From assembly GCA_965285935.1 (NCBI GenBank), contig OZ260663.1:92876001-92940000 (forward strand): 64,000 nt of DNA, given 5' to 3'. The first letter of the stretch is position 1. The number at the start of each line of letters is the position of its first letter. The notes below the pieces were generated by a model. The model was not told where the DNA came from. It did no database searches and saw nothing but the letters and a program-made list of their open reading frames with translations. This document shows, piece after piece, positions 9,296-56,226 of the stretch. A program made the translations under genes and the position numbers. Source of the stretch: Ophelia neglecta (taxonomy: Eukaryota).

Positions 9296-9410
9296 TGTAA
9301 CACTTTTTAGTATATCCTAACGGTGCGTTTTCGCTTAATTCTCAGGATAATTAACATCGTATAATCCACAGCTAGTTTTGTGTGCATTTCACCTAGACTT
9401 CAGTCACAAA

Positions 9411-9507
9411 CTGGTAGTGTCAGTGTGAGAACTCGATGTGCACAGTACCGCGGCGCCGCGCAATGGGTGGTAAATACAGCGCCGGCGCAGCGCGCATCAC
9501 TCGCCGC
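9411..9507 (-). promoter_or_regulatory. Conserved upstream box (G1)
   Basis: + strand GTGTCAGTGTGAGAACTCGATGTGCACAGTACCGCGGCGCCGCGCAATGGGTGGTAAATACAGCGCCGGCGCAGCGCGCATCACTCGCCGC, ~115-210 nt upstream of the ATG. Confidence 0.8.
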
Positions 9508-10393
9508 TCATTCATTCAATTAGGCGATGATGGAAATTGTTCGATTAAGAATATATCATCATGGGTCAACTTGGGTTGGTTTGGTTTGTAAGGATCGTCA
9601 ATTTACACATAACTCTTTGGTTGTTAAAGCTTATTAAAATAGAATTAGTGATTTTATAAATTTAAGACGACTGCTTTTCAAACAGCGATCACTCTTTGTA
9701 CAAGTGTGGTAATCCTACTGTGCCTGTATATGCACTGCCATATTTGTTGTCTGACGATGGCTTTTTCGACTGCTTAAATACCGATTTGTGTTGGATGGGG
9801 ATAATCGGGAAAAGTATGCTTTTGTAGAAAAAAGCAAACGAATGCGAGTGGGGGAATAGGAAGTGAGAATCCCTGAAGTGTGTTCTCCTAATGGAAACAG
9901 TGAATCTTTATGAAGTGAAAGCCCGTATTATGGAAATAAGATCCCTACAAGGGTGCATTATAACCATAATCATCTGTTTTGATGAATTTGATGCGCTAAT
10001 AATGGAACTAATTTGAACTGAATATAACTGACTTGTGGGTTATATAACCATGCTAACTAATGCCAAGTGTCTTTAATGAAACTTTTGAAAATTTGAGCAT
10101 TTAACGAATTTTAAACGCCGTTATTACCGCAAAAATATACAGGAGCATTAGGACGTTTTATATGAAGGTTCACAATAATCAGTTGGGTTGTATTTTTGCT
10201 AAAACAACATCGTTTCATTAACTATACACGTGTTTAATATACTTATATATGAGCAGCAGGATTACAGTACAAGTACGAGTTAAGCAGCCAGTTCCTATCC
10301 GTGCTTAATTAGCCGTAAAACGTTTTTGTTCTTTTGAAATATTTTTGTAACGGCCCACCCACATTCCGAATGCAGGTATATACATATTGATAC

Positions 10394-10453
10394 GAAGCAA
10401 TTTAAGCCTTCGTGAAGCAATTAAAGCCTTCGTGAAGCAATGTAAGCCTTCAC
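10394..10453. repeat. 20-bp minisatellite, 3 copies, in the presumed G2 3' UTR
   Basis: GAAGCAATTTAAGCCTTCGT / GAAGCAATTAAAGCCTTCGT / GAAGCAATGTAAGCCTTCAC. Confidence 0.9.
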
Positions 10454-10639
10454 GAATAATCAAAATATCATAACTGCATTGATTGCGATGTTTATACTAT
10501 GCATCTACTTAAAAAAATTGTACAAAACTGCTTAAATCTATCCAAATATGCACATACGGCACATACTGTGCACAGTTCGTCTGCTGATTACGTATAACAC
10601 AATTCTTAACAAACAATATTTCCAAACGTTTGTGGCCAG

Positions 10640-13600
10640 TCACTGTGTCTCAATGTCAGATTCCGTTTGTTCACACGTTAGCTTCCTGTCAAATTGGGCG
10701 TGCTCCGTGTCTAACTCGAGACAAACCGGATCGGTAGTGTCACTCTCACTGCGCGTGCGCCTTAAGAATGTTGGTGACTCATATTTATGTTCGGTGACAG
10801 GTGGTTTAAATATGGTATGGTTACCACCCCGCGGGTATTGTCCGCGATTCATGGTCCCGTGGACTGCATGGTTCCCTGCGTAGGGGACGGATGCAGTTGG
10901 TGGAAGAGGCAATGGTGGGAACCGTTCCCCTTGTGTCAAGGGGTCCGGACGCACAGCCATGTTCCTCTGTGCTGTAGATGTATACTCCCGTCCTTTGGAA
11001 TATTTCTGTGATTTATCGTCGCATACCAGCATAGGATCAAGTTCTTTAGCATAATATTGCGGAGGAGACATGCATTTTGCCGGCCCCATCTGCGGATCAG
11101 CCCTGGACGCAATAATTGCGTCATGCTTTCTGTGAAGACAGAAATGTAAAATAACGCTTTTGTAAGATCATTTGTTTTGCCTCATACTTCGTGATCCTTT
11201 TATTGTTTTTTGGCAGTGCAAAACTCACAGGAGGATATAGTTATCTGATCATCAATCAAAAGTCTCAATATAAGTTAGTATTCTATGAAAACACATTGTT
11301 AATCAACTAGTGCATGGAAAAAAAACTGCCACTCACCTTCTAAAGCTTACAATGCCGATCACAAGTATAGGGACTGCTATGATAGCTGCAGCGGCTATGA
11401 TCACCACAATGAGAATCCCTGAAAGATATTCCCATGGTGGAAGAGTAAAACAGCATTTGAATTGAGTAATGAACAACGAGAAATTATATTACAAATAATA
11501 TTAATAAATAGTAAATATATTGATTCGAAATATTTTGTAAAACAAACAGGAATATGGTTTGCGTCATGTGTGTTGTTCGGTGTTTATCTTAAAATGTGTT
11601 TTCAAACGATGGCTTACATTGGGGTAAGGCCTGAGCACCATTCACCAGATTACCGAAGGACTCGGGCGGATCAACTGTAGTTATAAGACGTATATTACCG
11701 GCGAAGGACTGCTGTGCAACAAATTGACAGATAACTGTAATAATCTTAGTTTAATGTGAATATAATTGATACGACATAGATCCTGTGCAAACAGTTCATC
11801 GTCAACTATAGCGCATTTTGCATTCTGAATAAAAAAATATCTCCGCCGTTGTGAAGAATCGATTGTACAAACCTGACACGTTGCAGCTCTTGACCTGCCC
11901 ACTATAAGTCCAGCGCATTCCATCACATGACATTCGCCAGTCATTTCCTGTTTGGGGACATGTCACTAATATCTCATCCCCCTGATATTCGACAACTGCG
12001 CCTTCTGGCGGGATATAAGCTGGACACAATATGACTGTATCGAAGATAATGTAAATGAGGGTGAGAATGACATTGTAGATTAATTGATTTTTTTGTACCT
12101 TGAAGACAAGTACTAGCAACTTATATCGAAGAGCAATAAAATAGTCTGCGAACTTAATATGAAATCTACATTGTATATTTATATGCTTATGGTTATGTTA
12201 CATACAACGAGGAATTCAAAATGCAGTGTACTCACTCTCGTACTTTAGAAGAAAATACGCTGGATTTTGTGAGTTTTTAGGGTTGGTCAATGAGATCCGA
12301 ACGGTCTCTCTGCCAGATACGTATACTACATTTTCTCTAATCTCACCCCCGCAAATGGTAATGGTTCGTTCACTGGTATCAGAGAAGGGTCCTGCGCAAT
12401 CAATGTTTGAACGACTTTATTTCATCAAGTAAGCATGTTCTTAATACTTAAGTCTTAATCATTTGGAAAAAAAACTGTTTAATTGCGAATCTTTTAAACA
12501 TTGCTTCTTATCAAGTTACCTTCTGTGATCCTGGCATATATTTGACATATACCTGTCTTCTTTGGTTGTAGCATTGCATCTTCTTGACTATAAGAACTGT
12601 CCTCCTCGGGGTTAGAAGGATTCCACACACCGAAGTCATGTAATGTGAGGCGGACCTTCTGTCCAGGGTCTCCCTTAACCTCCCAGGGACACCTCGCAGA
12701 ACCTTGTCCAGTCTGCCCTGTGATGAAATTGGCCAGTAAGCCATTTGTACCATAGACCGATAGGAGGTTGTTAGTACATGGCGTCGGTGACGTATACACT
12801 GAAAATAATGGCAAGGTTTAAAACAATTACCGATAGGTATGCGGGTGTCAATAAAGAGACTGGATGAAAATAGAACCACCATTTAGACAGGGGGCCACCT
12901 ACCAGGCGTACAGTTGAATTGTAAATGTAGGTATGAATCAAGATTCTTTATGCAAGGCTGATTTCCAGCGACCAGGTTTTTATCCGGAAGTTCAAGCTCA
13001 CATGTCTGTCTTCCAGAGCAAACCGAGTCCAAATAGCTGAGCACATCTACTTGGCATCTTGTGAAACTATGTGTGCCCTGCTTTATACAACTTCCAACAG
13101 ACATCTGTCCGTAGTGCGCTTGTTCTATCTGTATAACCTCATTTTCTACACAGCTAGCCTGAAATTTTTTCCAGTTACAAACATCCTGCTTTTCTGCAAA
13201 AGCAAAAAGGAATCATGTAAGTTTAATATTGGAACGTTTAATTGGTCCTGATGATGTGTATGCATATTTGTTACTAACTTTAGACTTTACCGCCTGTGAG
13301 TTCCAAGTACATATAAATGAAAGAGTAACCGCAGTGTACATTTATATAGCACATAGGAGAACAGCAAAAAATTAATTTATATACTATAATACTCATTCCT
13401 GACTGTTTTAACATATTATTTATTTATTCAAATTATTCTGAAGCCTTATACTTTAGTATATAGTTCACAAATCTATTGAGTACGAGAACGAATTACATAA
13501 AACCTGGTTTTTTACCGAGCACGCCTTATAGACGGCATTTAATACTGAAGTAAATTCGTGCTCTAAAAGTATACAAATTGAACACATATCACTCCTATAT

Positions 13601-16600
13601 AATTTACAGGTTGCCTATTACAACTCCGTGCTCTACAAAGAGGTCATGATCTCGAGTTCCAAATAAAGTGAAAGCAAATCCCTCCGAGGTTTTTTATTAT
13701 CATTCCGATTTGCAGTCTAAAGCTTATTTGTGCAATGCTTTGAAGCTTTTGTTCATCCCCACCCTTTGATTTCCTTACACAGATTATACGTTAAAACGCA
13801 CATATTTACTATTTGTGGTCCAAGTTTCCCCTAGCATTATATATGACCGTTTGATATTACACTAAAGATTATCTGGTATTCATTGTGTACAAGGCAAACT
13901 AACTGTGCTAACCTTAAATACGGCCTTTAATGTAACCAAGATAAGTAAATCACATGACTTTGGGTACAAAGTATGAGGAATCCTCCTACCTGCTGCCGGT
14001 CGACTGTTAAACGCCGATGTTTTGAAGAACAGATCACTGGCACTTTATTACGTACGTGATAAATATAATCGAAAATATTTAACCCTGAATAACCTTAGGA
14101 AGGTCGTTCCACTCTAGCCTCAAGGGTCCGGCGACGTATGTTTACGTTTTGCATATGAACACATTATCGTGTAATTTGCAGGTCGAAAACATTTTCTGCT
14201 ATTTATGCTACAAATTATTACATACAGGGTAATGTACAGCTACGAACAGTGAAATATGGTCCAATAAATGTTTATGGCAATGGGAAAAAGTATAAGCATG
14301 AGTCACACTATTCTAGATCAGTTTAAACGCTAAGCTGTTCAGCTACCCGAGCCTTTAAAGCACATATTTCACAATATAAATGGTGTCAACGGTCATTCAA
14401 CCGCGGATATGCTTCAACTAGAATGCACTCGTTTGAGGTATAGGTGGTAGCTTTATTCTTGTATACCCATTTATTGATGTATTCCCAAAAGTCTTTATGG
14501 AATCACACTATGATCAGTGGTTCCTCTTGGGCAATGATATCACAAGGAAAACTTGCTATTTGAGCCTTGGCCAAGCTTGCAGGTTAATGTATGTCGTCAG
14601 CTGATTCACAAACGCATTAAAATTGGCAAAATAATGAGTCACCGCTGCGGAGTGAGTAATGGCGCCTGAAATTCACAGACATAGCAACGATCAGTAGCTA
14701 GCACTTAATTTGCGATGGTGTACTCCTCTACCATGTTTAACATTTAATTATGCACATTAAGACTGATGTAGTAATTCTTTAGACAAAGAGTTAGAATCAA
14801 ACGGTCAAGGCTAATCGGAAAAAGAAAATCTGAGATCAAGATTGTAAAATTGGTTTAAAATAAAATAGATAACGGGCAAGACTAAACGAATGTGCCATGA
14901 AATCAATAGGAATGTCATTAACATTTCTCCCAAATAATTTAAAATTAGTTGCATTGTCTTCCTAGTTTCTTTCCTTTTTTTTCTTTTCACATACTGTTGG
15001 TGTATTGTATGTATATGCAACACAATTGGAGTCTTGCATCAAGCTTGAAGATCCGGCTCCGCCCTACAGTGCGCTACGCTACGCCGCGTTACGCAAAGAC
15101 GCATCATGCGCCAAGCCGCGCCTCCCTCTCTCTGTGTTATAGAAGGGACACTTGAAGCAAAAGCATCGTTTTGTTTAGTCAGAATACATCCCCAATTTTT
15201 TGTACGTGTAAATTGTTGAATTTATGAAATTGAAGACTACATATTGATTAATACTTATTTCTACATACTGTTTATTTCAAGTACGTATTCACCCGAAGGA
15301 ACAATTATGATTACTGAAAACACCTTCTAGTACGTTAATACAAACAGAATATCGACTCGAATATATGAGAAATAGTTGGCGTGGATAACACATTATTGGT
15401 CGGCAAAAATAGTGTTGACGATAATACAAATACACAAATCTGAACAGTATGACTGCAATTAAAGGTTGTTCCAGGTTTTTGTTGATTAAATCCCACGATA
15501 CTCAGTTAATGATTGGCCGCCCCCTCCAAGTTGTAGTTATATATCTGTCTTGTAAGGTTATTTTTGCTGTTCTAAGCAATAAAAACCAATACAGTTTAAT
15601 GAGTCTGTGTATTTGAATAATGAAGAAAATATTAATTACTGATTTACTGCTCTGCATGTCTCAGTACACCATGCAATTGCAAACATTACTAACAACTTCA
15701 TAGGAATATTATATTCTATTGATCCTCGATCCTATTCAGTGGTTTTGTAAGCATAGTGGGACCATTGACTCCAAACCTTTGGTAAATTCGACCAATTTGG
15801 TACATCTTGTGTGATGCACAATATTAAAGTCGCATTCATATAACTTACTGGGGACATTACATAGTTTTCCTTCGCATTAATCTACGAGCGTTATGTATAA
15901 TAATGAAAGTTGCAATGCATTGTGTGTTATTTCTCATTCAAGGGGAGCGAGAAGCTTAAACCCTAATCCGAAAGCCTGGTCAGCAATTATTTGGCACAAC
16001 AGTACCTTAAGTCTTCATTAGAACATGTGGCTCATCCACCACAGCAAGACATCTGTTAATCAGTGGCATTATCGTGTTGTTGATAAAAATAAATGACAGG
16101 AGGCGATTCCCATCAAACAAAGCAATCTCAATTGTCAGAAATGATCAAATATATCGGCTACCTAGACAACAAGCGTCTCAAACCGAATATGTCATGTCCA
16201 ATAGTATACACTAGGCTTGTAACGAAATCACATGATGCCAATCAACTGCCGTAACCAATGAATGTATCATTGGGTCTTGGAGACTATGGCTTTCAGTGCT
16301 AAATATCGCGTGTGGATACCCGGCAGAGAAATAAAAATTAACTATCAGGAATATTTTTTGATTAGCGGTCCTTAGTCATCAGTAATTTTATCAGGAAGAA
16401 CTCTATCAGGATCAAACCACATCATTAACAAGGGCCATTATAAGCTAATTTATTTAGCTAAATGAAAACTTGGAAATCACCAGCAAGGTATATTGCATTA
16501 GACTTATATCTGTGAATCGATTGGCACCTAATTAAATTGATTTAACACTCTGGTTTAGTTTCGTCCCTACGATATTCACATTCACCAAATATTTGTATAC

Positions 16601-17506
16601 ATTAAGTGAACTTAGAGTTGACAGCTCCTGGATTTGAAGTAATTAAATGAAAGTATTCTTGAGCATTGATTTTGTTATGCTTGACAGGTGCCTGTGTGTT
16701 CAAGCTAAAAGCTTCACCGAGTAAGCCGGGAAACAATGCATTTGTTTGTTCACGCTAGGAACATTTTCAGCAGATAAGATATATATGCTTATGAACCGAT
16801 TGAATTTAAGATAAACGTAGTTCTTTTCCCGTCAAACACAATCCTAAATAATTACAATATTTATGTAGATTTCCCAAATTTTCTGGGATATTGATAGTCT
16901 TAGTTCATTCTGAGATATACCTTTAGTGCGGAACTTATTTGTTGTGGGTTGAAAAAGGACCGACTGGACAGAGCGGGAAGATACGGGAGGGGGGGTGGGG
17001 GGCGGGAGGCTAGGGGGGAGCATGCAATTATGTCAGGAAAGACCACGAAATATAAGATAAAGAGCAGATGGTAGCATTTAATTGTTTTCTAAGTGCATCA
17101 AAAAATGCAAATTAGGTGCTTATATAATTTTGTCTCTGTAGAAAATAATTCACGTTTTAGCATAAGCATATGTTCTTGTACACAAGATGACATGCATAAA
17201 TTTTACATGAAATACCCGTGGTAGTATTAACGGCTTCATAAATACTTTCCAACAAGGAGTTGTATAGAATATATTCTAGATTTATCCAAATGCATACGAT
17301 CATGTGGACTAGCGGCGTTCCCTGCGCAAAAGTTTAACTCGACCATTGGCTCTGACTCAGTAGGATGGCTTGATGCCACATAATCTCGGTTCAAAATGGC
17401 GTATTCAGTGAATAATACTTAAATATTACTTACTCGAGCCTCCAGCTTCTATCCACATAGGCATGGTCACTAATATTAGAACGACTTCTGTTTGTAGGGT
17501 ATCCAT
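10640..17506 (-). CDS. G2: SUEL-lectin/CUB-like/sushi-like single-pass membrane receptor, ~529 aa
   Basis: Exons 17506-17434, 13193-12903, 12798-12520, 12391-12236, 12034-11873, 11674-11618, 11418-11337, 11129-10640. GT-AG junctions at homologous positions; total 1590 nt, in frame. Confidence 0.9.
15054..15121. promoter_or_regulatory. Conserved CpG-rich intron-1 element (G2)
   Basis: GCGCT ACGCT ACGCC GCGTT ACGCA AAGAC GCATC ATGCG; pentamer-periodic and aligns with the G1 element. Confidence 0.65.
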
Positions 17507-17624
17507 TGTAACACTTTTTAGTATATCCTAACGGTACGTTCTCGCAATAATCCTTAGGCTAAAATAACAACCTTTTTATCCGCGGCTAATAGTGTGTGCA
17601 TCCCACCTAGACTGTTGTTTCCGA

Positions 17625-17721
17625 CTGGCAGTGTCAGTGTTAGAACTCGATGTGCACAGTACCGCGGCGCCGTGCAATGGGTGGTAAATACAGCGCGGGC
17701 GCAGTGCGCATTATGCTCCGC
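17625..17721 (-). promoter_or_regulatory. Conserved upstream box (G2)
   Basis: Near-identical to the G1 box at the same distance from the ATG. Confidence 0.8.
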
Positions 17722-21900: not shown

Positions 21901-24900
21901 GTTCAAACTGAGGAAGGGATACCCAAGCTGGACAACATTTCTCTAGTATTAAAAATATTTCTTGTCTCTGTTGATATCAAAAAGAGTTCAAATCATAGTA
22001 TGTCGGTTTTCAATCGGAGTAATTTTCGAAACGTGGCAAGTCGTCTTTATTTCATCGGTGTTCGCTATGTTATGGATTACCTGGTCATGGGGTTATGTTT
22101 AATTTATGCGCGCTATCCGATTTAGGTTCATCTACCTACAAACGATGGCTGAAATATAGAACCATAACTTACCTGTAATATCCTTCAGGAATTTTACCTA
22201 TACATGTATATGTATATTATTAAACTGCGAACTTATTTTATCGCAAAGTTGCTACTGCCGTTTCATGCGTAAGGTGGCACTTTTTTCATCAGCTGAACTT
22301 ATTACCAAATTAGTATGTCAATACCTGCTTGTGTGTTAAATAGTAGATTCCTTAATGTTTCCTTTCGGCCAAACATTTTTTTTTATTGAATCTTTTGTCC
22401 CTTCCCTTCTTCTAATAGCTCTTTCTCAAAGTATTACAGTTATCATACATATTGCTACCATTGAAAAAAGTGCGGGCAGAGCAAAACTCGTGATTCATAA
22501 TAGCATGTATGTGTACTAAATCCGTGCGTTTTACAGTGTCAAATTCACGTGGAAAATCGTTAGGTCATCCGGCACTCACCTGCGTATCTAAACCATAAGT
22601 TGCCCTTCAAAGAATAAGGTTCGAAAAAAGCTATACTTTGCAAAACCAGGTTTCACGCCCCGCTAGATAATAGACTTATGCATTATGTTCAGAATTTTTT
22701 GTACCCCAATCGTTACAGGCCAGCAATTATGATATGGCTACAGACTACTACACTGTGGTGTTTCTAAATACGGCTAATAATTGTAACTGGGAAAATCAAT
22801 AACCACGACATAAGTGCCTTCCTTAAACCTCAGGAGGGTGATAAATCCCCCCCCCCCTCCCCCCGATCTTTCTCACATTAAACAGGGCAGTCTTCGAAGC
22901 GTAGATAAATGTCACTGTATTAGATACTGGATAAATGTACTATAAACTATTTAGCACTGGATACCGGATGCCATCGAAGCTTTAGGGGATCTGATAGTAA
23001 CTGTTGTCGTTTGACGTAGCATCATGTAATTTATAGAGCAATCATATTGTATCCTACTGTCAGTCACTCATTAAATGCAGATTAACAAACTGTGGAAGTC
23101 GTTACAATAAATGTGTTTCTGCTTGTCGTATAAAAAACATGTATAAACCACCCAATACTAATGTAATCTATATAAGGAAACGATATTGTATAACGTATTG
23201 TAAATGAGGGTCGACAACTTCGGTTTAACTTCTAATGTGCGTCAAGTAGACGGCACCTGTCTCAGATACTAGGTACATCATTTACCTAGCATATCCATAT
23301 ATCCATGTAATTAAGAGATGAACCGATCCTTGGGGAAATAAAATAAGCTAAGCCGTCCCTCTGGGAGGATGAGCTCACCAGGAAAACTTCCTATTTGAGC
23401 ATGGGCCAAGTTTCCATATAACAACGTCATCAGCTGATTCGCCAACGCATTAATAAAGGAAAAAGGGTAGGTCTTCGCTCTCGATTGAGTGTTAGTAGCT
23501 GTCATTCACTGGCATAGCAGCTATTATTTGCTGACGAGTTCCTCTCCACTATTAACTCTAATACCGATGCTTAGCACGAAAGTATACATGTTAAGATTTA
23601 TATTTTAATCTGTTAGATATTATAAGTAAGAACCAGACTGGGATCAATAATGATTTAAAGACTGTAATCATTACATTGGTTCAAAATCCCAAGAAACCAC
23701 AATATCAAGACCAGAACCCCAGTACCAAAACTAAAAAAAAATTTCAAATGTAAATTAGGACTGGGTAGCATGCTTTATAAGGAAATGATATCATTAGGCT
23801 TTACGAAGAATTAATAAACGGCTCCCGCGCCAATGTGCGCAATGCTACGCCGCGCTTCGCCGAGACGCGTCATGTGCGACGGTGCCGCAACGCGCCTATC
23901 AAGCAGATTTGTCAAAAAGGGTAATAAAGGGGAAACAATATGAGGATGGTAGGTTAGCTTAATGTCGTTAGGTTAAATGTGGCTTCTCAGTTCAATCGTC
24001 GGATTATTGTTTTCCTATTATGAATATAAATATCGCACTGTGATATAAAAATGTGGAATGTCGAAGCTAAAAGGTATCTTATGCAAACTTGTTTTGATGT
24101 TTGCCTATATATATGGTGACCTTAATATATAGGTTCACAGAAAATATTTGTTGTCCATGCAGAAGTAAGAAATTGTGGCAGTATTGAATAAGAATGATTA
24201 TTCTGGTCTAACTATCCAACAGTAGGAAAATATATAGTTGACGAATGAAATGTTTTTTCCTTGTTAAACTTTGTAAACCATTATACCACACATAGTATGC
24301 CCAAGGAAAAAATAAAAGGAGACACTTTATCCGATTATTTTATTTTGGCACAATCCTATCTAACCCTCTATAGCTGGGAATTGATGTTTGCGGATCTAAC
24401 CGATTTAACGGGCAATTAACGACCACAGAATTTAGATAGTCTGCCGGATATCCACACCTGTTCTTTTAATTCGTTCTTTTCATTAGTTTTTTTTAAAACA
24501 TGTGTTTACTATTTGAGAACTTCACGTCAATGTCGAAAACAAGTTTAAAAAAATATGGAAACATTATCGTGTGTATAGGTTAAGCGCTTTGTCATTTAAC
24601 TAAGGATGGAGACTGCATCCACTGTGGTTTCAATATATTTGGTTTACGATTGAAATTGCCAAACGATGAATCAAAGCTAAAACAACACAGTGTAGTTTGT
24701 TGATACATTTAATTTTACATAGTAGGAATGCTCTTAACTGAATAACACTTATCACACTTTCGTGTTCAACATTCACTACAAAAACATATTGGAGCCATTC
24801 ACCTCTAAACGTTAACAAATGTATTTTCAGTGCGTTGGTTTGATTGTAGATAAGTGTGTTATCTTAATTGCAAAAAAACAAAACAAATCATAATGAGCTT

Positions 24901-26424
24901 TAGGGTACTTTTTACGCGAGGGCTTATTCATAGACCACATGGTAGAAAATCAATCGATTATTGCATTGACCTACGGTGTGAAACATGTAGCTACGCATTT
25001 TAGTGCCTGTTGTATGACATAAGGATTGTATTCCATTTATGGATAGTGAGAAATGAAAACCAGAAATTGTTAGCAGTAGTTTGAATAAAAGTTTCTTATT
25101 TCTTCATTACCGCCTGCTTCATGCTCGACCACATATTATCAATACACAGGGACATTATGTGCTTAAATTTTCTTATATATCAAATAACATGATACTGTTA
25201 ACTCCCTTAAGAAATTGTCAACACCATGTTCCCTAAGACTTCTATTTGTGTGTTATCTTTTTAATTTAATGAGCATAGTCAAAGTTAATTTCGTACCGAT
25301 TCATATTTGAGAGCTTGTTGTTGAAGTTCTATATCCGAATTTTTATTATAAGCCTAGGTGTCAATTTATCAAGACAAGGATTTGCTTCTTACTCATTTAC
25401 AAAATCAACACCATTTGGCCTAATTCTAGTTTTTGCCTTTGACTTATTAATTTATTTCTAACATTTAAATATATTTTCGTAAGTTATTATGCGCCTAGCT
25501 TTTGTATAAACATATAAAGCAATGCTTCTAAATCACTTAAAGCATTGTCAGGCCATGTGACCCAAGACTTATCTCTGTGTTGACATCATATAAACTTAAT
25601 CATCGCATTCAATATTTGGTTTCTTACCTATTAAACGTTTACTGGCTAGTGGTATTGTACAAATCTATAGCTGACAGTTACTGTCTCTGAAACAGTTTTA
25701 TTAATTATTCCTGGTTACTGGTTTTGTTCCGTTTTCCGGTTATATCTCAGTATGTTTTTCTCTATACTGCAGAAGTATTTACAACTAAACGAGTATCAAA
25801 AGAAGGAATGAACAGACAATCATAGTTCTATATTTCCCAATAGACAAGCGTTCAATGATTATTATGAATTATATTCTATTTTCATATTTGTTCCGTTCGA
25901 TTTATGTAAATTTTCCCTTATCGTAGGAAAACCCTTCCGGCGGAAATCATTTAATACCAGTTGCACTTGATAAAGGGGAGGAAAAAACAGTTTATGAGAA
26001 TGGTAATATAATTGAATTTTACTTTATTGCTGCCTCCTCGACGAATATGTGCTTAAATACCATCTCCGTTGAAACTTGTGCACACGTAAGCATAATCATG
26101 AGTTATCATAGATCTATTGATATGAAATAGATCCGAGGCAACTTAATATCATGGAATACATGTTCCATTTATAACAAAATAAACCATGCGGTTTCGATAG
26201 AAATGGTAGGTATATAAAAGAGACTGAACATTCCGAACATATCAGCAATAGGATAATTCGTACAGTGGCTCTCACTTAGTAGGATTGCTCAATGCAACGT
26301 ATTTGATGGTTCAAAATGGCGTAGTCAGTGTAATACATAAATAGCACTTACTCGAGCCTCCTGTTTTTATCCACGTAGCCATGGTCACTAAGATTAGCAT
26401 AAATTCCTTCAGCACAGTATCCAT
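18963..26424 (-). CDS. G3: SUEL-lectin/CUB-like/sushi-like single-pass membrane receptor, ~523 aa
   Basis: Exons 26424-26352, 21865-21572, 21183-20914, 20726-20583, 20376-20215, 20006-19950, 19742-19661, 19452-18963. GT-AG; total 1572 nt, in frame. Confidence 0.9.
23819..23895. promoter_or_regulatory. Conserved CpG-rich intron-1 element (G3)
   Basis: GCGCA ATGCT ACGCC GCGCT TCGCC GAGAC GCGTC ATGTG CGACGGTGCCG; aligns with G1/G2. Confidence 0.65.
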
Positions 26425-26541
26425 TGTAACACTGTGTTTATATCCTAGCGTCACAGACTCCAATTAATCCTCAGGATATAATTAACATTGTTTAATACGC
26501 ATTTAAGTTTGCGTGCATTCCACACAGATTTCAGTCATAGA

Positions 26542-26638
26542 CTGAGAGTGTCAGCGTTAGAACTCGATGTGCACAGAACCGCGGCGCCGCGCAATGGGTG
26601 GCAAATACATTTCCGGCGCAGTGCGCATCACTTGCCGC
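26542..26638 (-). promoter_or_regulatory. Conserved upstream box (G3)
   Basis: Near-identical to the G1 box; CAGCGCC core changed to CATTTCC. Confidence 0.8.
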
Positions 26639-44600: not shown

Positions 44601-46041
44601 GTATCCTACTCTTTTACTACATTCTGAAGGTCAATCCCTGCCGTTCAATAAATATGTACCTATTCTATAGGTATTTGTCACTATAATATTTTGATTAGTG
44701 TATATCGGAAAACAAACCAAACGCAGTTCACATGAATAATCTAGATAATCGAACCAACATCATAAGGAATCTTCAGGAGTAGACCCACACAATATAAAAC
44801 CCCGCCACTGTATTCTTGATATTAATTACCTGCCGTAACCACTGAATATAATGACTGGCGATTGAAGACAATGGCATCTTCAATAGGCCTAGTTATTTTC
44901 ATGTGACAAGCTTTGTTTTGTCGAAAAGTGCTACTTGTTCTTTTGTCTTTCAATCATGAATATGTTTAATGGTTTAATGTGTCAAAATTCAAAAGCAACC
45001 ATCCCCAAATTAAGCATGAACCACCAAATGCAGGCCCATTTATTATCAATCTCCTGGGAGATCATATGTTGATATTTTAATTGGTCAGGCCCAAAGAAAT
45101 GTCCAACTCACTTCCGATTACCAACAGACATGGTGGCCTATGACTTATCTTTGTTTTCATTTAGTTCCACATTAAATGTCAGTTCCTTACCTACTCACAT
45201 TTGAGAACTGGTTATCAATTAGTTGATAGCTACTATCTTTGAACCATTCTTAATCACATGTTTTTTTTATTTAACGGTATTTCTCAGGTTAAAATGAAAA
45301 GATTTCACCAGATAAGCAGGGAACAAATCATTTGTCCCTGTACTTTGACCATATTTACAGCTAAATAAATTACATATGTAAGAGAATGTACAAATAATCC
45401 TACGCCTGACTTTCCCGAGCAGACTGTCTTGTGTAATTAAGAAATCATTTTTTTACATTTCAAGTATTTTCTCAAAAATCGTTATATGTAGAATCATTAT
45501 GCGTATGAGTTGCATTGAAGTAGGACTGAATAAAGAGAAAATCGAACGTGGGAGGGGGGGGGGGGTGGCAATATAAAAGTCGATGTTTACTATTTAGTCT
45601 TATATAGTTTTATTGTGATTGCATTGCATTGTATTCGTTGGATGTAAGCTTTAGGAGCTTATATATTTTTATCTCTGGTAAATCTGAAAAACACCTTAGC
45701 ATAGGCATATGCTAAAGTAGACTGTGTGATGAATTAGATCCTATTTTACAAACCCAATACAACGTTAAATCTTGCAATACTGGTCCCATTTCTAATAAAT
45801 TGAAACAATGCGAAATCCATATAATTAGCAAATACACACTCAGTACTGTATTTTCTAGGAAAAAAAGGTCAGCAGTTTTATTGGCTCTCACTCAGTAGGA
45901 TTGCTAGGTACCACGTATTATTAGTTCAAAATGGCGTACTCATTGTATAATACATAAATAGCACTTACTCGAGCCTGCTGCTTTTGTCCTTATAGCCATG
46001 GTCACTACGATAAGAATGCATTCTTTCAGCGTGGTATCCAT
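38675..46041 (-). CDS. G5: SUEL-lectin/CUB-like/sushi-like single-pass membrane receptor, ~526 aa
   Basis: Exons 46041-45969, 41933-41643, 40804-40526, 40430-40287, 40160-39999, 39679-39623, 39414-39333, 39167-38675. GT-AG; total 1581 nt, in frame. Confidence 0.9.
43240..43313. promoter_or_regulatory. Conserved CpG-rich intron-1 element (G5)
   Basis: CAGCGCTAAGCCGCGACGCGCCATGCGCTACGGTGCTGGGC aligns with G1/G3. Confidence 0.6.
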
Positions 46042-46157
46042 ATTAAAACTTTGTTTTATCCGAACAATACGTTCTGGCATTAATCCTCGTGATACAATTA
46101 AAATCTTATAATCCGCAGTCAATGTTGTGTGCATTCCGCCTAGACTTCATTCTCAGA

Positions 46158-46253
46158 CTGGCAGTGTCAGTGTTAAACTCGATGTGCACAGTAGCGCGGC
46201 GCAATGCAATGGGTGGTAAATACAGCGCCGGCGCAGTGCGCATCACTCGCCGC
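46158..46253 (-). promoter_or_regulatory. Conserved upstream box (G5)
   Basis: Near-identical to the G1/G4 box at the same distance from the ATG. Confidence 0.8.
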
Positions 46254-47122
46254 TTAATCATTCTATTGGACGGTGATGGAATTAACTGAGAATAAATAAT
46301 TGTTGGTCTTCTTCTATAGATTTAGTTTTTAAGGATTGTGACTTGTGGTATTTAATAAATCCAGCACTTGATCGGAAATAATTAAAGAAATAAGAAATTA
46401 TACGAACAGATGATGTCATTTTCTCATACAGTAAGTAAAAATGCCATCGCTGTCTGTTGCTTGTGGATATCTATGTTTGACTAGTAGCAAATACTGACTT
46501 TTTTGTGCCAAACATGGATTTAAGACTCCTGAAGAGATGATTTATAGGGATTGGGAGGGTTGGCAAAGCACACAATTTATAGATTTGAAATGATTTAGAA
46601 GATAATTTGTTTGGACTTATATAGATTGCATGGTGTGATTTTATTCCTTATAGTCAACGGAGATAACATAGCTGCAGGTGTACATTCATATATGTATTTG
46701 CGGTGTAAGTTGGAAACATATCCCCGTTTTTTCATCAAAGTTCACGTAGTTAAACAAGAGCAAAAGCCAAGAATACCATTATTTCAAAGGAAGTAGTTGA
46801 ACATCCCAGTAAAAGCAGGTAAATGTACACGCATTTTTTTTCAGCTGTTTATCATTATTAGGTTTTGAAAATTTAATCTTTTTGATAAATGAATTTTCCC
46901 AAACGAACGCAGTCAACATCAATGGAATCCCATTCTTGCCCGATGCAAATGAAATTAACGCCAGTCGGGTAGCCACTCTCGTTGTTTTCTTCTATTTAAT
47001 CAGGCAGCTCATCATTATTATGCAACTCACATAATGAACTTAGGTATTTAAGAACTATGCACATAGCCTGAGAGTTTATAGTTAAACTTGTTAAGCCTCC
47101 TAAAGATGAGAGAGTGGCCACC

Positions 47123-48290
47123 TTATGAAGAGGTTGACACGAGTGGGTCACCGACCGCTATATCAAGATTCGATTCGTCCGGATCAAGAGCCGGGTTGGT
47201 ATCCAAATCGATGTTTTCCAGATCTAAGTCGTTGAAGGCGAGCTCATTGGTGTCACTCTCACTGCACATGCGCCGGATGAATTTTGGAGATTCATATTTA
47301 TGTTCGGTATGGGGTGCTCTGAATGTACCAGTGTTATGATTGTCTCTTGGGTACCGTTCATTATTTGATTTCCCGTGAAGGCTACACGTCCGGGCCTGTG
47401 GCATTGAAGACGTCGGCGGCATTGGTAGAGGCGGAAATCCTCCACCTGGTACCACGATCCCCGGACGTACAGCCATGTTCCTTTGTGCAGTGTTCACGTA
47501 CTCTCTTCCTCTAATGGGATTGTGTGATCCTTCGTTTTTAACCAGCATCGGGTCGTCCTCTTTTGTAGTAAGTCCCGGATGTGAAATGCACATTTCAGTG
47601 TCCATCCGGGAATTTGGCACGGACACTATCATCGGGTTATTCCACCTGATATAACGCAAGCATAGAACACATTAATTGAAAACACAATGCCATTCTTTTA
47701 TTATTATTTTTCACTCCATGAACACTAAATTAATACATTATTATTATTTAATGCATACTATTTTTTGCTGATCACCAAAACGTTATTAGATGATATGAGT
47801 ATATAAACTTCTCGAGAATATCCATTATACTTGTTTATTGCTTGTTATTACAGTTTGACCTCAATAATTGTCAATTTTCTATTTGTTATAAAACCCAGTG
47901 ATCAAGAAACTGACCTTCGAAAACATAAAATGCCGAACACAAGTAAAGGGACTGCTATGATGAGTGCAGCTACTATGATTATCGCAATGAGAATCCCTGA
48001 AAGTAAAATCATAGGCTTACAATGGGTAATTTCCAACGAATCATAACCCAGATTATCTAATTATAATGGCATGCAAGGGATGAGATAAGATACTAGGCTT
48101 TTATCCGGGTATAAACTGGGTGAATGTCAGAATCAACCACATTGCCTCAAAATAAAGATTAAAGGAATTCATTTTTCATACCCTTTCTGTTAAGCTTAAT
48201 TATCAGTTATTACTTAGCCTACTCACATTGCGGTAGGGTAAGAACACCTTCAAAAAGCCCTCCTATTGTCACAGGCGTTTGACCTGTAAT

Positions 48291-48323
<33 letters not shown>

Positions 48324-51300: not shown

Positions 51301-54300
51301 TTATCTGCTTTCAGGAGTGCAGTCACAGTCACATTTTCGAAGAAGACGATCATGTGTCATTCCCTGAATTATGACTAAGAACAAATCGACTTTCTGCTAG
51401 GAAGTGATTATTAGTTTCAGAGAATGCCACCAAGAGGACTTCCAGCGACTTATTCTCAATAATAGATAGGCAAATAATGTATCCTAATACAATCCATTTA
51501 GGTTTTGCATATAAGTTCTTCAGATACGAATGATTTACTATTAATTAGGTGCAGTTATTCTTTGCAAGCTCTAATCAGGGAAGTTAGGTTTAGATTAGTG
51601 ATCCTGTTTCCTCTTTAACTTTCAAGGATGTTTTCCATCCCGCATTAGGCACATGTATATTCAGAAACATTCGTCTGTAGTCTCGCATTTTTGAGAGAAA
51701 TTCGGCAATCGTAGACTCTTTTCATGCATGTTTTATATTCAATCTATCTTGACCACTGGCGCGTTTGCTGTGTTGTATGCCTTAAATCACTAACACTAAT
51801 GTGGACTATGCCAACATGCAAGTGATATATGATGTAAGTTAATAAATTAGCCGGCTTCATCTCTTTACAAGCATATTTACCGTTATGGAACCAGTGGGAT
51901 ATAATTTGCGGGCCTGCAGCTGACGGCTCCTTATGATTTCGAACGATCTCATTGGAAAATTCTTGATTATATGATTTCATTTGTCTGCAGGGTATCTACA
52001 GTTTGACAGGTGAATGGATTTATGCGAGGACAATGCCGGTGCAAAATTAATGGAAGTCCTCTAGTCGGAAAGTTCTCCCAGTCAATTTTAACTTGTACTA
52101 ACCCAAAGCAGGGTGTCCCCGGTCTTTAAAGACTAGCATTCCCCGGTATTGAAACACAGGTCTACTTAGGATCCGTTCCCCAAATCAAGATTTATGGCTT
52201 CCCCCGTTCTTAAATTACTGGCATAGTGCGTCCGCAAGGGATTATTACCCCCAATAAAGGATGGTATAATAAGCATGATATATGTGGGAAGCTAATAGGT
52301 GTGTTTAGTAATGCCTTATAGTTTACATACTATACAGACCGGATACCGCTCCGAGTAGGTCGTGTATCTATTGTACGATCGTTGCAAGTTTTTGTAGTAG
52401 GTTAGGTGCAATTACAACGTAAGATATGGCAATGCTTTCTCTGTTTGTGCTCAGGGGCGAAATGTTAACCCCTTTTTCTATATTAATGCAAGTTTTCTAG
52501 AGAAAATAAGGAATTGTTAATTTGACTCAATCATGATAATTGACTGAACAAATTTATAAGTGGTTGAACAATCAGCAGTATATCTAATTTTATCGCACAT
52601 ACATCATTGTAATCCTGTCTCGGCGGATATATAGAGTAAACATACAAAGTAATATAGTTGCCACTGGCGTCATTCATAGAGGAAACATTTCGTGACAAAT
52701 CGCTTAATAATTTCATGACGCACACAATCGCCTTCATCTTGTTCACAACTTCCACCCCCTTTGGGTATTACTGGATGACTCATCATATGATAATAAACAT
52801 TTGAAACCACGAATAATATTGAGGTCATATGGTATTGTACATAAGCCGATTTACACACAAAAAATTGGATTTTGTCTGTGAGCAATTACATCTGCTAGGT
52901 CAAATGACAACAGAGTGTATCTATTCATGTTTGACATGGCTTCAGTTTGACATAAGCTCGGGTGGAAGCTGATTTTATTAATTAAATATGTAGCTGAAAC
53001 AAGTACTGAAATGGGAATTCATAGGCGGTAGCAATGTGGATAAAGTTCTAGCCAGTACCAACAATATTAAATGTGTAAATGAAGGAATGGGTCTGTTTTA
53101 ACAGTTGATACCAAATGCGGCCTGGCCATGTTGCAACAAAAATAACTATAGGTCAAAACTGATACCCTGGCACTCAGATTGTGCTGTCAGCATTGCCTTC
53201 GATTTAATCTATTTTATGACTTGGATGTGTCACGAGTAAATTCTTAGGAAATACCTTTTTGTACATAACATTTCCGAACAAGATTTGACACGGCCTCTAG
53301 AGACATTGCCACGAGACGCTTCACCATACAGCGCACAATGCAAAGCCTAGCCGCGCTACGGCTCTTCGCTCAACGCCGCGCCTGGCAAAGTCGTGCGTTC
53401 GCTCCAACAACGCTTCCGAGTAGACACTGTATGGGGCTACATGGAGTCCTACTAGTTCGTGTTGGCTAATTACAGTCCATCTATTCAACCATCGAAATAG
53501 CTCGCATGCTATATAATATGTGATGTGTTTCCATAAAATATAAAGATTGAAACAAAGTGCAATGTTACCACTTCGTTCAGACCAATTTTCAGGTGAAATG
53601 CTTTACGACACATACCAGGGGTATATCAGATACTTGTCACTTTATGGGCTGTTAAGAGCACTGACAGCAAAGTCAAACCTGATGATTGAAGAATCATAAT
53701 TTTGGAAATAGTTATAGGACTTTTTTACACCTCGAATCTGATTTATAATATGAACATGTTTAATGTACCCAGACATAATACATGTAGTTCCTATGGTATG
53801 AAAATAAGTATGCATGTAAAGTGCAGTTCGTATCAGCATATTAAGAAATACCAATGAACGTCTTAAAACGTTGAACGGTGTAGATGTCTATAGGTGAATA
53901 TGAAGGAATGTAAGTTAATGATGATTATAATTCCTTTAATCCAAGCATCGCATATTAGAAATTTGCATGGGAAAATGCTCAATATTGTTTGTTTGTCTTG
54001 ACTACCATACGTGTTCCGATTTGTTATGTCAAATATTTAAAACCAGTAGCGTGTAAAGTCCCACGCTCCAATTTCATTATAACTACAGCAGCGTTTAGTA
54101 CTTTGTAGAAACACTAAAATATTTTACAGATTAAACAGTTTATCGTGTTACTAATTAGATCTACTTCTGATCGTGACTATACAAAAGAATTGTCCCTTTT
54201 TACATTTAAAATGTGCAGACCAGTTGATTGGATTGGGTAATTGGGTGGATAACTGTGTGGGCCTTAGTGTGTCTTTAATTTGAATATACATTATATGTTG

Positions 54301-56012
54301 TTACCAGAACTATTTTAGATGTATATAAACATGGAGTCCTAGTACCAATAAAATGTTATTGAGCTCTATTGCGTTATAAACCTCTCTAGGTGGCTGGATC
54401 AGACCTCTTTGTTCTGACCAAAAAGCATAAGTAGAGGTTGATAAAAAGTTATTCGGTCTATAAATTGGTAATATGGTTTTTTAAACCTTCATATTGCAAA
54501 CATCGTGTCCATTCTTGGAACCTACTGCATTTTTGTAGTAGACCTCAAATATTGAAGGATTTAGTGTGGACATATCTTTCCAAGTTGTGAGGTTATGTTT
54601 TCAACATTTAATACCGTTTTCTAGTTTCGATGAAATGATAGAGCTCCAACAGAATATGTTGGATGGTGATCTGTCATTGGTAGGCGTCACAAAACAGTGG
54701 GTACTCTTTCTTTAGAAAGATAAAAGTGTCTAAAAAGCGCAAACGAGATATGATTAGTCGTCTAACCAGTTTAAATGATAGAACTCATATTTGTCGTAGG
54801 TCCAGGTATAGTCTAAATTTGACCAACCTATGCAAAAATGACGCATCAGGGGACGCCTGGCCAAACATTATAAATGACGTAGTTTGAAAAAGAAAAAGGA
54901 GACTGGAAATCGAAATTCGAATTAAGGACGGAACAGGATAAATATGTGTTTTTAACAAGCATGCATGTACCTAATAAATAAATAATCATGGGATAACACA
55001 TGATCTTGGAACCAATATGTTCAATATGGCCTACGTAAAATACAGAAAACACGTGTCAAATTTAAAACAATTAAATGGGATATTAGGAAAGGGGCATTGG
55101 GAAAGTTGGTCAAACATTTCATCCATTAATGCTACTATATACTTATCTGTGATTTTTAAGAATATATCCCTAAGCATTGGTGAATTATTCAATGGTTATT
55201 GAATTATCACTTCAATGGCTTACAGACGTAAAAATGGGGAATAACTTAATACCATAACGGACTAGGATATAAGATTTTCTTCTTCGACGGTATCATATTA
55301 CTAACGCACTTTAATGATTTCACCAAAGTAATCGGGAAGTAAAATAAAAGCTTACATAATGAATAATAATCTACTTTCAGTTGATAAAACTTGAAAACTG
55401 GACCATGATATTATTAGTATGATATCAAGTTATGTTTTTATTATTCATTAAACGCGCACCAATAAACATCCTTGAAAATAACATGAACATAAGTCACTGG
55501 ATGCTAGTACGGATTAAGTAGAAGAACATTGTTGAAGGGGGGGGGGGGGTGTTGCGATATTAGTCTATTTTAAAAAGTGACACATCAGAAGCTCTATGAA
55601 TTACATTTCTGCTGGAAATTATTTACAAAAATGCCAGTGTCACATGCAAATATACATACATTTGAATACACGTGTTTGCCTACATAATTACCGAAGGGGA
55701 ATGGACACGGCCATATTTCTTTAGCATTAACAATGTGGGCGCAATTGGGTTAGTATTTGCATACGATAAACTGCACAGTAAAGACGTTACATGAAATAGG
55801 AATAACTAGCAGTGCGGCCCATAATGGCATGATTGTTTTAATCGAAGTATATGCTGCATATTCAAAATATGGACGAGCTGGTAGATACTTGTACAAAAAA
55901 GCGTTCGTGCTCAGTAGGTAAAGACTAGGTGTTACTTACTGGAGCTGCCTGCTGCTATCCATATCGCCATGATTGCACAGCTCAAAAAGAGATCTTGCAG
56001 TAGCGTATCCAT
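47123..56012 (-). CDS. G6: divergent SUEL-lectin/CUB-like/sushi-like single-pass membrane receptor, ~535 aa
   Basis: Exons 56012-55940 (MDTLLQDLFLSCAIMAIWIAAGSS), 50994-50707, 49931-49653, 49101-48958, 48667-48506, 48283-48227, 47996-47915, 47645-47123. GT-AG; total 1608 nt, in frame. Retains the canonical SUEL YGR motif. Confidence 0.9.
48295..48322. repeat. (AT)n microsatellite next to the G6 stalk-exon acceptor
   Basis: About 14 AT units read directly from the sequence. Confidence 0.9.
53315..53382. promoter_or_regulatory. Divergent CpG-rich intron-1 element (G6)
   Basis: ATACAGCGCAC..GCCGCGCTACGG..CAACGCCGCGCC at the same distance (~2.55 kb) from exon 1. Confidence 0.45.
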
Positions 56013-56145
56013 TTAAACGAATATAATATAACAATTCTCACATACCAACTATCCAGGAATTTATTTTATAATAATATCCTCGTATTATTTTGTTGAAATT
56101 CCTAGTGCATAATGCTTGTGTTCCGCCTAGAAATCCCGCACACAG

Positions 56146-56226
56146 CGGTAGTGTCAGTATCAGAACTCGGTGTACACAGGCCAATGGGTGGTAAATACAG
56201 CGCCGGCGCAGCGCGCATCACTCGCG
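56146..56226 (-). promoter_or_regulatory. Conserved upstream box (G6, short variant; lies between divergently oriented G6 and G7)
   Basis: CAATGGGTGGTAAATACAGCGCCGGCGCAGCGCGCATCACTCGC is identical to G1 although the G6 protein is divergent; lacks the CGCGGCGC sub-block. Confidence 0.8.

What the first reader, a model, noticed from the sequence alone, without database searches (positions are those of the whole stretch)
9411..56226. A ~95-bp CpG-rich upstream box is better conserved than the adjacent coding exon in every minus-strand copy
Seen: the box occurs once per unit (1167, 9411, 17625, 26542, 36718, 46158, 56146), ~115-215 nt upstream of the ATG. A 44-nt core is identical between G1 and the divergent G6 even though their signal-peptide exons differ extensively. 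It holds palindromes (TGTGCACA, CGCGGCGCCGCG, GCGCCGGCGC), a forkhead-like GTAAATA (TATTTA on the sense strand) and a CGCTG core. Known: clustered protocadherin promoters share a CGCT-containing, methylation-sensitive CTCF element. Inference: a shared promoter element enabling co-regulation or promoter competition. The match to the CTCF consensus is only partial, so the factor is unknown.
Basis: partly seen in the sequence, partly recalled or inferred. Interest (0 to 1): 0.8.

Follow-up and report, generated by a model that had tools for sequence, protein, structure and literature searches.

The report
Shared promoter box of lectin-gene array
A ~95-base non-coding block just upstream of every gene in a tandem array of lectin-type membrane-protein genes really is better conserved than most of their coding sequence; it is most likely a shared proximal promoter module, which is a real but fairly ordinary kind of feature, and its binding factor is unknown.

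Summary
The window carries seven minus-strand copies (G0-G6) of an 8-exon gene: signal peptide, SUEL lectin, CUB-like, sushi-like, TM, tail. Each copy has one ~95-nt box, in the same orientation, ending 121-141 nt before the ATG.

In a whole-unit alignment of G1-G6:
- The box is the second best conserved 95-nt window (83%); only the TM exon is higher.
- Its upstream half is the best conserved 40-nt window of the whole unit (91.5%).
- 72% of ungapped box columns are invariant, against 21% of four-fold sites (p 2.5e-7).
- The box beats the signal-peptide exon in all 21 pairs.
- Divergence is reduced evenly in every pair, which fits selection and not pairwise gene conversion.

A plus-strand copy with a broken exon 1 (61948-62027) has a decayed box.

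I found no RNA structure, no peptide-level uORF signal, no match to a CTCF consensus and no copy outside the family context. The best reading is a composite proximal promoter module that keeps the paralogues under common control. The protocadherin/CTCF promoter-choice analogy is not supported. The TSS, the factor and promoter activity remain untested, and no orthologous locus could be retrieved.

The parts
1161..1251 (-). Box, copy G0 (most divergent; 8 nt shorter between CCACCCATTG and GTGCAC; no ATG at the uORF position)
   Evidence: E 1.9e-25
9410..9504 (-). Box, copy G1 (reference copy). Invariant cores in order on the sense strand: CTGCGCC, CCACCCATTG, GTGCACATCGAGTT, CTGACACT. An Inr-like CCAGTTT sits at its 3' edge.
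17624..17718 (-). Box, copy G2
26541..26635 (-). Box, copy G3
36717..36811 (-). Box, copy G4
46157..46250 (-). Box, copy G5 (1-nt deletion after GAGTT)
56144..56225 (-). Box, copy G6 (13 nt shorter in the middle; 44 nt identical to G1 in the upstream half)
61948..62027 (+). Degenerate box of a plus-strand copy (P2): 67-70% identical to G1/G5/G6, 4 CpG, GC 0.44. It is followed by a broken exon 1 (ATG 62057 then an in-frame TAA two codons later; internal deletion).
9223..9295 (-). Exon 1 CDS of G1 (signal peptide, 73 nt, donor GTAAGT at 9222). Equivalent exons: G0 954-1026, G2 17434-17506, G3 26352-26424, G4 36528-36600, G5 45969-46041, G6 55940-56012.
9296..9409 (-). Spacer between box and ATG in G1 (putative 5'UTR if the Inr-like CCAGT at 9412 is the start site). 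Moderately conserved: 0.58 mean over 21 pairs.
9130..9222 (-). Conserved 5' end of intron 1 in G1, with ACGCCATTTTG. It is 78-87% identical among G1-G5 but only 55-61% to G6.
2179..4761 (-). Exons 2-8 of G1: E2 4761-4448 (SUEL lectin), E3 4245-3959 and E4 3839-3685 (CUB-like), E5 3544-3335 (sushi-like), E6 3187-3076, E7 2866-2765 (TM), E8 2664-2179 (tail). The same eight blocks recur in G2-G6.
58403..61514 (+). Plus-strand copy P1: exons 2-8 only. No box or exon 1 is detectable upstream (56400-58400).

Best explanation
The box is the proximal promoter module of each paralogue in a tandemly duplicated family of SUEL-lectin-domain, single-pass membrane-protein genes. It is double-stranded DNA read by sequence-specific factors.

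Four invariant cores (CTGCGCC, CCACCCATTG, GTGCACATCGAGTT, CTGACACT) lie in the same order and orientation in all seven copies. In most copies an initiator-like CCAGTYT follows directly, about 117 nt before the ATG. Purifying selection on this dense set of sites has held it nearly constant while synonymous sites, introns and even the signal-peptide exon diverged. The likely consequence is that all paralogues respond to the same regulators, that is, co-regulation.

Shown: its existence, its one-per-gene position and orientation, the strength and evenness of the constraint, and its decay in a copy with a broken first exon. Inferred: that the constraint acts on DNA binding, that the start site lies at or near the 3' edge of the box, and that the outcome is co-regulation. 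The factor or factors are unknown. A run of about 40 almost invariant bases would suit either a multi-zinc-finger protein or tightly packed or overlapping sites.
For: Constraint:
- The box is the 2nd best 95-nt window of the 8-10 kb unit, and its upstream half is the best 40-nt window.
- Invariant columns among G1-G6: box 58 of 81 ungapped (58 of 99 if gap columns count as variable), four-fold sites 18 of 86, Fisher p 2.5e-7. This is on a par with codon positions 1+2, at 52%.
- Pairwise identity at four-fold sites is 0.58 against 0.83 for the box.
- Box divergence is 0.23-0.66 times exon divergence in all 15 pairs and follows the same ranking, rho 0.70. The constraint is therefore uniform and not a conversion tract between particular pairs.
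- Against the deep outgroup G6, flanks fall to 0.47-0.57 while the box stays at 0.79-0.90.

Linkage to the downstream gene:
- CTGACACT to ATG is 121-124 nt in G1-G5, 138 in G6 and 141 in G0. Stop codon of the upstream gene to the box is 704-1866 nt.
- G6 keeps the box although no minus-strand gene lies upstream of it.

Loss where function is lost: the plus-strand copy with a broken exon 1 differs at 21 positions that are invariant in G1/G5/G6 and has lost most of its CpGs.

No support for RNA-level readings: folding z-scores are -0.3 to +0.7 and there are no compensatory pairs.

Not a dispersed repeat within reach: there are only the 7+1 family-linked copies in 64 kb, one chance 20-mer hit in JGI metagenomes and none in viral contigs.
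Against: - There are no expression, accessibility or binding data, and the TSS is not placed.
- If transcription starts upstream of the box, at a weak TATA-like ATnTATTCT about 50 nt 5' of it in G1-G5, the box would lie in the 5'UTR.
- No known factor consensus fits: CTCF gives no hit and canonical NRF1 hits only G2 at 2 mismatches.
- The initiator-like motif is perfect in only 3 of 7 copies and absent in G6.
- Spacing between the cores is not fixed in G0 and G6, which carry 8- and 13-nt differences.
- All the evidence comes from paralogues in one window. No orthologous locus could be obtained.
Confidence: 0.6

Rival explanations
1. The box is transcribed as part of the 5'UTR and works at the RNA level, as a short upstream ORF and/or a protein-binding RNA element that sets translation or stability of all paralogue mRNAs.
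For: - An ATG (in GTGATGCGC) opens a 23-25-codon ORF inside the box in G1-G4, and an ATG is present in 6 of 7 copies.
- A TATA-like ATnTATTCT lies about 50 nt upstream of the box in G1-G5.
- Further upstream ATGs occur in the spacer of several copies.
Against: - G0 lacks the ATG.
- The reading frame is shifted by a 1-nt deletion in G5 and by the 13-nt difference in G6.
- Substitutions in G1-G5 fall about equally on all three codon positions (read).
- Conservation begins before the ATG and continues past the stop codon.
- RNA folding is no better than shuffles (z -0.29 to +0.59 on the sense strand) and no predicted pair shows compensatory change.
- Rfam finds nothing in the window.
Confidence: 0.15
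2. This is a protocadherin-CSE-like element: a site for CTCF or another architectural zinc-finger protein that loops each promoter to a shared enhancer, giving stochastic or competitive choice of one paralogue per cell.
For: - The box has one copy per tandem unit at about 120-210 nt before the ATG, much like the CSE at about 200 bp (PMC4978886).
- It contains CGCT in 6 of 7 copies.
- It is CpG-dense, so it could be sensitive to methylation.
- A run of about 40 near-invariant bases would suit a multi-finger protein.
Against: - None of the seven boxes matches the CTCF core consensus (from memory) at up to 3 mismatches, while 32 other places in the window do, which is close to the chance level.
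- Units are complete genes, so no shared constant exons force a choice.
- No shared enhancer or boundary element was identified.
- CGCT is a 4-mer.
Confidence: 0.07
3. There is no function: the block is kept similar by repeated gene conversion between copies, or by a locally low mutation rate (for example a germline-unmethylated CpG cluster).
For: - The copies are tandem and close together, so conversion is possible.
- The TM exon also shows raised identity at synonymous sites, 0.73 against 0.58, which could hint at some homogenisation in the array.
- An unmethylated state would protect the CpGs.
Against: - The excess identity has the same sharp limits in all 21 pairs and scales with exon divergence.
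- The adjacent spacer and upstream DNA are not homogenised.
- Non-CpG cores (CCACCCATTG, CTGACACT) are the invariant ones.
- The copy with a broken exon 1 decayed although it sits in the same array.
Confidence: 0.06
4. The box is a fragment of a dispersed repeat or transposon that happened to sit in the ancestral unit.
For: None found. It cannot be excluded genome-wide, because only 64 kb of this genome is available.
Against: - Only family-linked copies occur in the window.
- There are no terminal repeats, no tRNA-like part and no Rfam family.
- The metagenome scan gave one chance match without flank similarity and the viral scan gave none.
- A passive fragment would not be the best conserved stretch of the unit.
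Confidence: 0.02

Closest known systems
W/SXY module of MHC class II (and class I) promoters
   Same: It is a composite proximal-promoter element made of several short boxes in a fixed order and orientation. It is shared by all paralogues of a clustered receptor family and imposes common regulation (PMC7866136). This is the best functional analogy for what the box probably does.
   Different: - There is no sequence relationship. An inverted CCAAT (ATTGG) appears only in G6.
- Spacing is fixed only in G1-G5.
- The factors are unknown.
- The genome is invertebrate-like in composition (CpG o/e 0.85).
- The genes encode SUEL-lectin membrane proteins.
Conserved sequence element (CSE) of clustered protocadherin promoters
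   Same: It has one copy per tandem unit, about 200 bp before the start codon, contains CGCT, and is better conserved than the surrounding promoter (PMC4978886).
   Different: - The CSE is a CTCF/cohesin site serving choice among variable first exons that share constant exons.
- Here the units are complete genes.
- No CTCF-consensus match was found.
- The element is about four times longer.
Family-wide promoter motifs of other multigene arrays (immunoglobulin V-gene octamer, histone-cluster promoter boxes, olfactory-receptor O/E plus homeodomain sites); named from general knowledge, not tested here
   Same: Short conserved promoter motifs are retained at a fixed distance from the start codon across many diverged paralogues.
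   Different: Those motifs are 8-15 nt islands. Here about 40 contiguous bases are nearly invariant, and the whole 95 nt is conserved at the level of non-synonymous codon positions.

Membership tests
Protocadherin CSE / CTCF promoter-choice element | One element per tandem unit, about 200 bp upstream of the start codon | tested here: met
   The box spans roughly -120 to -210 relative to the ATG in all seven copies. CSE position from PMC4978886.
Protocadherin CSE / CTCF promoter-choice element | CGCT box | tested here: met
   GGCGCTGT is present in 6 of 7 copies; G3 has GGAAATGT. A 4-mer carries very little information.
Protocadherin CSE / CTCF promoter-choice element | Sequence is a CTCF binding site | tested here: not met
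   The consensus CCASYAGRKGGCRSY (from memory) with up to 3 mismatches gives 32 hits in the window, none inside any box. Binding itself is not testable here.
Protocadherin CSE / CTCF promoter-choice element | Units are variable first exons spliced to shared constant exons | tested here: not met
   Each unit carries its own eight conserved exon blocks, including TM and tail.
Composite proximal promoter module shared by paralogues (SXY type) | Several sub-boxes in fixed order and orientation in every family member | tested here: met
   The four invariant cores are in the same order and on the same strand in 7 of 7 copies.
Composite proximal promoter module shared by paralogues (SXY type) | Fixed spacing between sub-boxes | tested here: inconclusive
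   CCACCCATTG to CTGACACT is 36-37 nt in G1-G5 but 33 in G0 and 24 in G6.
Composite proximal promoter module shared by paralogues (SXY type) | Lies in the proximal promoter (just upstream of the transcription start) and drives transcription | not testable with these tools
   Only the position relative to the ATG and an initiator-like CCAGTYT are available. There are no transcript data.
Composite proximal promoter module shared by paralogues (SXY type) | Under purifying selection relative to neutral sites | tested here: met
   72% invariant columns against 21% at four-fold sites, p 2.5e-7. The box has decayed in the copy with a broken exon 1.
Conserved upstream ORF / structured 5'UTR element | Start codon, frame and stop kept in all copies, with substitutions biased to third positions | tested here: not met
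   The ATG is absent in G0, the frame is shifted in G5 and G6, and there is no third-position bias.
Conserved upstream ORF / structured 5'UTR element | Stable RNA fold with compensatory changes | tested here: not met
   z-scores are -0.29 to +0.73, and 0 of 21 predicted pairs have compensatory changes. No Rfam hit.
Dispersed repeat / transposon fragment | Copies outside the gene-family context | tested here: not met
   None in the 64-kb window. There was one chance match in metagenomes and none in viral contigs.

The most novel reading that the evidence does not exclude
The box is the docking site of an architectural multi-zinc-finger protein, either a divergent CTCF or an unrelated one. This protein links each paralogue promoter to a shared enhancer so that individual cells express one or a few members of this lectin-receptor array. 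That would be an invertebrate-type system of receptor choice, independently evolved and analogous to clustered protocadherins, in a family with almost no relatives in public protein collections.
Probability: 0.07. Interest if true: 0.8.

Novelty: new member of a known kind. Interest (0 to 1): 0.35.

Why it matters
If the reading is right, about 95 bp carries most of the shared regulatory logic of a lineage-restricted family of lectin-type surface receptors. This gives a compact handle for three things: reporter constructs, finding the controlling factor by DNA-affinity methods, and asking whether the paralogues are co-expressed or mutually exclusive.

The degree of constraint is notable for paralogues this diverged. 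About 40 bases are 91.5% identical while four-fold sites are at 58%, and a 44-nt exact match spans the deepest split in the array. It argues for either a long-footprint factor or overlapping sites. In kind, though, a conserved proximal promoter module in a tandem gene family is expected biology.

Tried and rejected
- **RNA families.** An Rfam scan of the whole window gave nothing.
- **RNA structure.** Single-sequence and alignment folds showed no signal.
- **tRNA-like or tandem-repeat origin.** Nothing relevant was found.
- CTCF has no hit in the boxes. Canonical NRF1 hits only G2 at 2 mismatches; the boxes carry GCGCA-C-TGCGC, with one extra base. The forkhead core TRTTTRY occurs 229 times in the window, so it is uninformative. 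By eye there were also no convincing ZNF143, YY1, E2F or RSS-like matches inside the box.
- **Palindrome excess.** It is marginal in G1: 3 palindromes of at least 8 nt, matched by 5% of dinucleotide shuffles. The 12-mer is not conserved.
- **Plus-strand ORF across the box (9436-9591).** Rejected, because the indels among copies break it.
- **Orthologous loci.**
  - The tail-exon profile against 1.84 billion representatives gave only 8 weak hits, the best at 5e-12, all fragments.
  - The two long contigs carrying relatives (ERZ25070167) returned no DNA, and a Logan contig likewise.
  - L001 (GCA_022702875.1) shares only a tail motif and has no box. I had no reason to take it for human and dropped it.
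  - The exon-3 profile search found nothing.
- **Box DNA in public collections.** There was one chance hit in JGI metagenomes (L002) and none in viral contigs.
- **Other window ORFs against Pfam, for transposon clues.** Nothing was found.
- **Spliced protein model.** The joined model was not assembled or searched; all protein work was done exon by exon, by reference.
Full report
**What the window is**

The 64-kb window has 37.7% G+C, a CpG observed/expected ratio of 0.85 and no N. It looks like an animal genome with little CpG depletion, and nothing in it was taken for human.

It holds a tandem array of 8.2-10.2-kb units on the minus strand. A whole-unit alignment of six units shows eight conserved blocks per unit:
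- a 5' block with the box, a spacer and a 73-nt first coding exon encoding a signal peptide;
- seven further exons.

Exon 2 encodes a SUEL-type lectin domain. It scores 35-43 bits in five copies, above Pfam's cut-off of 31.4. Exons 3-4 look CUB-like, but support is weak (E 0.08). Exon 5 looks sushi-like by eye only. Exon 7 is a transmembrane segment and exon 8 a cytoplasmic tail. All exons of G1-G6 have open frames.

The joined protein model was not built or searched; all searches were done exon by exon.

**Checking the observation**

A profile search recovers the same seven, plus one weak plus-strand copy.

*Specific claims.*
- The 44-nt exact identity between G1 and G6 is real.
- The box ends 121-124 nt before the ATG in G1-G5, 138 nt in G6 and 141 nt in G0.
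- GCGCCGGCGC is present in 5 of 7 copies and TGTGCACA in 5 of 7.
- The 12-mer CGCGGCGCCGCG is only in G1 and G3, and that whole stretch is absent from G0 and G6.

*Is the box better conserved than its surroundings?* Yes.
- Among all 95-nt windows of the unit alignment, the one at G1 9410-9504 ranks second, at 83.2% mean pairwise identity with gaps as mismatches. Only the TM exon is higher (86.1%), and every other exon window is lower (77.6% or less).
- At 40 nt, the upstream half of the box (G1 9461-9500) is the single best window of the unit, at 91.5%.
- Over all seven copies the box averages 0.79 (0.85 ungapped). The 100 nt upstream average 0.46 and the spacer 0.58.
- The exon-1 CDS averages 0.67, and the box exceeds it in each of the 21 pairs.

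**Selection or something else**

Codon-aware comparison, done exon by exon, gives 0.58 pairwise identity at four-fold sites, 0.775 at codon positions 1+2 and 0.72 overall.

Across G1-G6:

| Site class | Invariant columns | Fraction |
|---|---|---|
| Box, ungapped columns | 58 of 81 | 72% |
| Four-fold sites | 18 of 86 | 21% |
| Codon positions 1+2 | 572 of 1090 | 52% |

The box differs from four-fold sites with Fisher p 2.5e-7, counting gap columns as variable (58 of 99). It is not distinguishable from codon positions 1+2.

- The box's divergence is 0.23-0.66 times the exon divergence in every one of 15 pairs and follows the same ranking (rho 0.70).
- Against the deep outlier G6, the flanks drop to 0.47-0.57 while the box stays at 0.79-0.90.
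- Excess identity with the same sharp limits in all pairs is what purifying selection gives. It is not what pair-specific gene conversion gives.

An internal control exists. The plus-strand copy at 61948-62027 sits before an exon 1 that is broken: the ATG is followed two codons later by TAA, and part of the exon is deleted. Its box is only 67-70% identical to G1/G5/G6. It differs at 21 positions invariant in those three, and it has 4 CpG where the others have 7-12.

**Which gene does the box belong to**

The distance from the box to the downstream ATG is nearly fixed. The distance from the upstream neighbour's stop codon varies from 704 to 1866 nt, with polyadenylation hexamers hundreds of bases before the box. 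G6 keeps the box although the DNA upstream of it holds an inverted, plus-strand copy. The box therefore belongs to the 5' region of the downstream gene.

**DNA or RNA**

*RNA-level readings are not supported.*
- Sense-strand folds are no more stable than shuffles (z -0.29 to +0.59), and none of 21 consensus pairs shows a compensatory change.
- Rfam finds nothing.
- An ATG inside the box opens a 23-25-codon ORF in G1-G4. But the ATG is missing in G0, the frame is shifted in G5 and G6, substitutions are spread over all codon positions, and conservation runs past both ends of the ORF.
- The uORF and 5'UTR reading is therefore kept only as a rival.

*Features on the DNA side.*
- Four invariant cores lie in fixed order and orientation.
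- TATTTA is present in 6 of 7 copies.
- An initiator-like CCAGTYT sits at the 3' edge. Against the YYANWYY rule, recalled from memory, it is perfect in 3 copies, off by one base in 3, and absent in G6.

*No known factor fits.*
- CTCF: no hit in the boxes at up to 3 mismatches.
- Canonical NRF1: only G2 at 2 mismatches. The boxes have GCGCA-C-TGCGC, with one base too many.
- The forkhead core class is too common to mean anything.

**Related sequences elsewhere**

The family is almost absent from the searchable collections.
- The tail profile found 8 weak fragments among 1.84 billion representatives.
- The exon-3 profile found nothing.
- The contigs that might have carried an orthologous promoter gave no DNA.
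- A 20-mer of the box has one chance match in JGI metagenomes, with no flank similarity, and none in viral contigs.

All inference therefore rests on paralogues in this window.

**Interpretation**

The best-supported reading is a composite proximal promoter module kept by selection in every functional paralogue (confidence about 0.6).

It works like the SXY module of MHC genes, with several boxes in fixed order and orientation shared by a clustered receptor family (PMC7866136). There is no sequence relationship to it.

It fails on the two features that define that system: a CTCF site, and variable first exons competing for shared constant exons.

Promoter choice by some other architectural protein is not excluded (about 0.07). 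It would be the interesting outcome.

**Verdict**

The feature is real and strongly constrained, but it is a new example of a known kind, not a new kind.

Noticed in passing
window 58403-61514 (+) and 61948-62230 (+): The array changes orientation after G6. A plus-strand copy (P1) has exons 2-8, closest to G6, but no detectable box or exon 1 in the 2 kb upstream. It is followed by a second plus-strand promoter region (P2) with a degenerate box and a broken exon 1. This looks like an inverted partial duplication whose members may be pseudogenes.
   Followed up: partly
window 9130-9222 (-) and the equivalent in G2-G5: The first ~93 nt of intron 1 are 78-87% identical among G1-G5, higher than the exons (74-79%), but only 55-61% identical to G6. 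They contain an invariant ACGCCATTTTG in 6 of 7 copies, which resembles a YY1 site (recalled from memory). This may be a second regulatory block downstream of the start site.
   Followed up: partly
window 2765-2866 (-) and equivalents (exon 7, TM segment): The TM exon is the best conserved 95-nt stretch of the unit. It also has raised identity at four-fold sites, 0.73 against 0.58 for all exons, so something beyond the protein sequence (splicing signals, conversion) may constrain it.
   Followed up: no
window 56144-56225 and 55900-56150 (G6) compared with G1-G5: G1-G5 carry 13 extra bases in the middle of the box (the CpG palindrome stretch) and lack 13 bases in the spacer that G0 and G6 have. 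As a result the distance from CCACCCATTG to the ATG stays at 166-170 nt in G1-G6. This could be a spacing constraint or a coincidence.
   Followed up: partly
window 56160-56175 (-), G6 box: Where G1-G5 have the palindrome TGTGCACA, G6 has two substitutions that create a different 8-nt palindrome, GTGTACAC, shifted by one base. This is a hint that palindromy itself may matter, but it is a single case.
   Followed up: no
window 37785-37879 (-): A TM-exon-like fragment, 67% identical to exon 7, lies in the unusually long (1866 nt) gap between the G5 stop codon and the G4 box. It is probably a relic of a partial duplication.
   Followed up: no
The equivalent exon-5 sites of G2, G3, G4 and G6 match at 3 mismatches. 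It is probably incidental to the protein code.
   Followed up: no
window 6482-6601 and 14999-15111: A CpG-rich piece of intron 1 is shared at 78% identity by G1 and G2 only. Similar CpG-dense patches at about 23700-23950 and 53200-53400 have no copies elsewhere in the window.
   Followed up: partly
whole gene family (exon 8 and exon 3 profiles): The family has almost no relatives in very large public protein collections. There were 8 weak fragment hits to the tail, sharing an EHxYESPxF-type motif, and none to exon 3. It therefore appears lineage-restricted, or comes from a genome that is not yet annotated publicly.
   Followed up: yes
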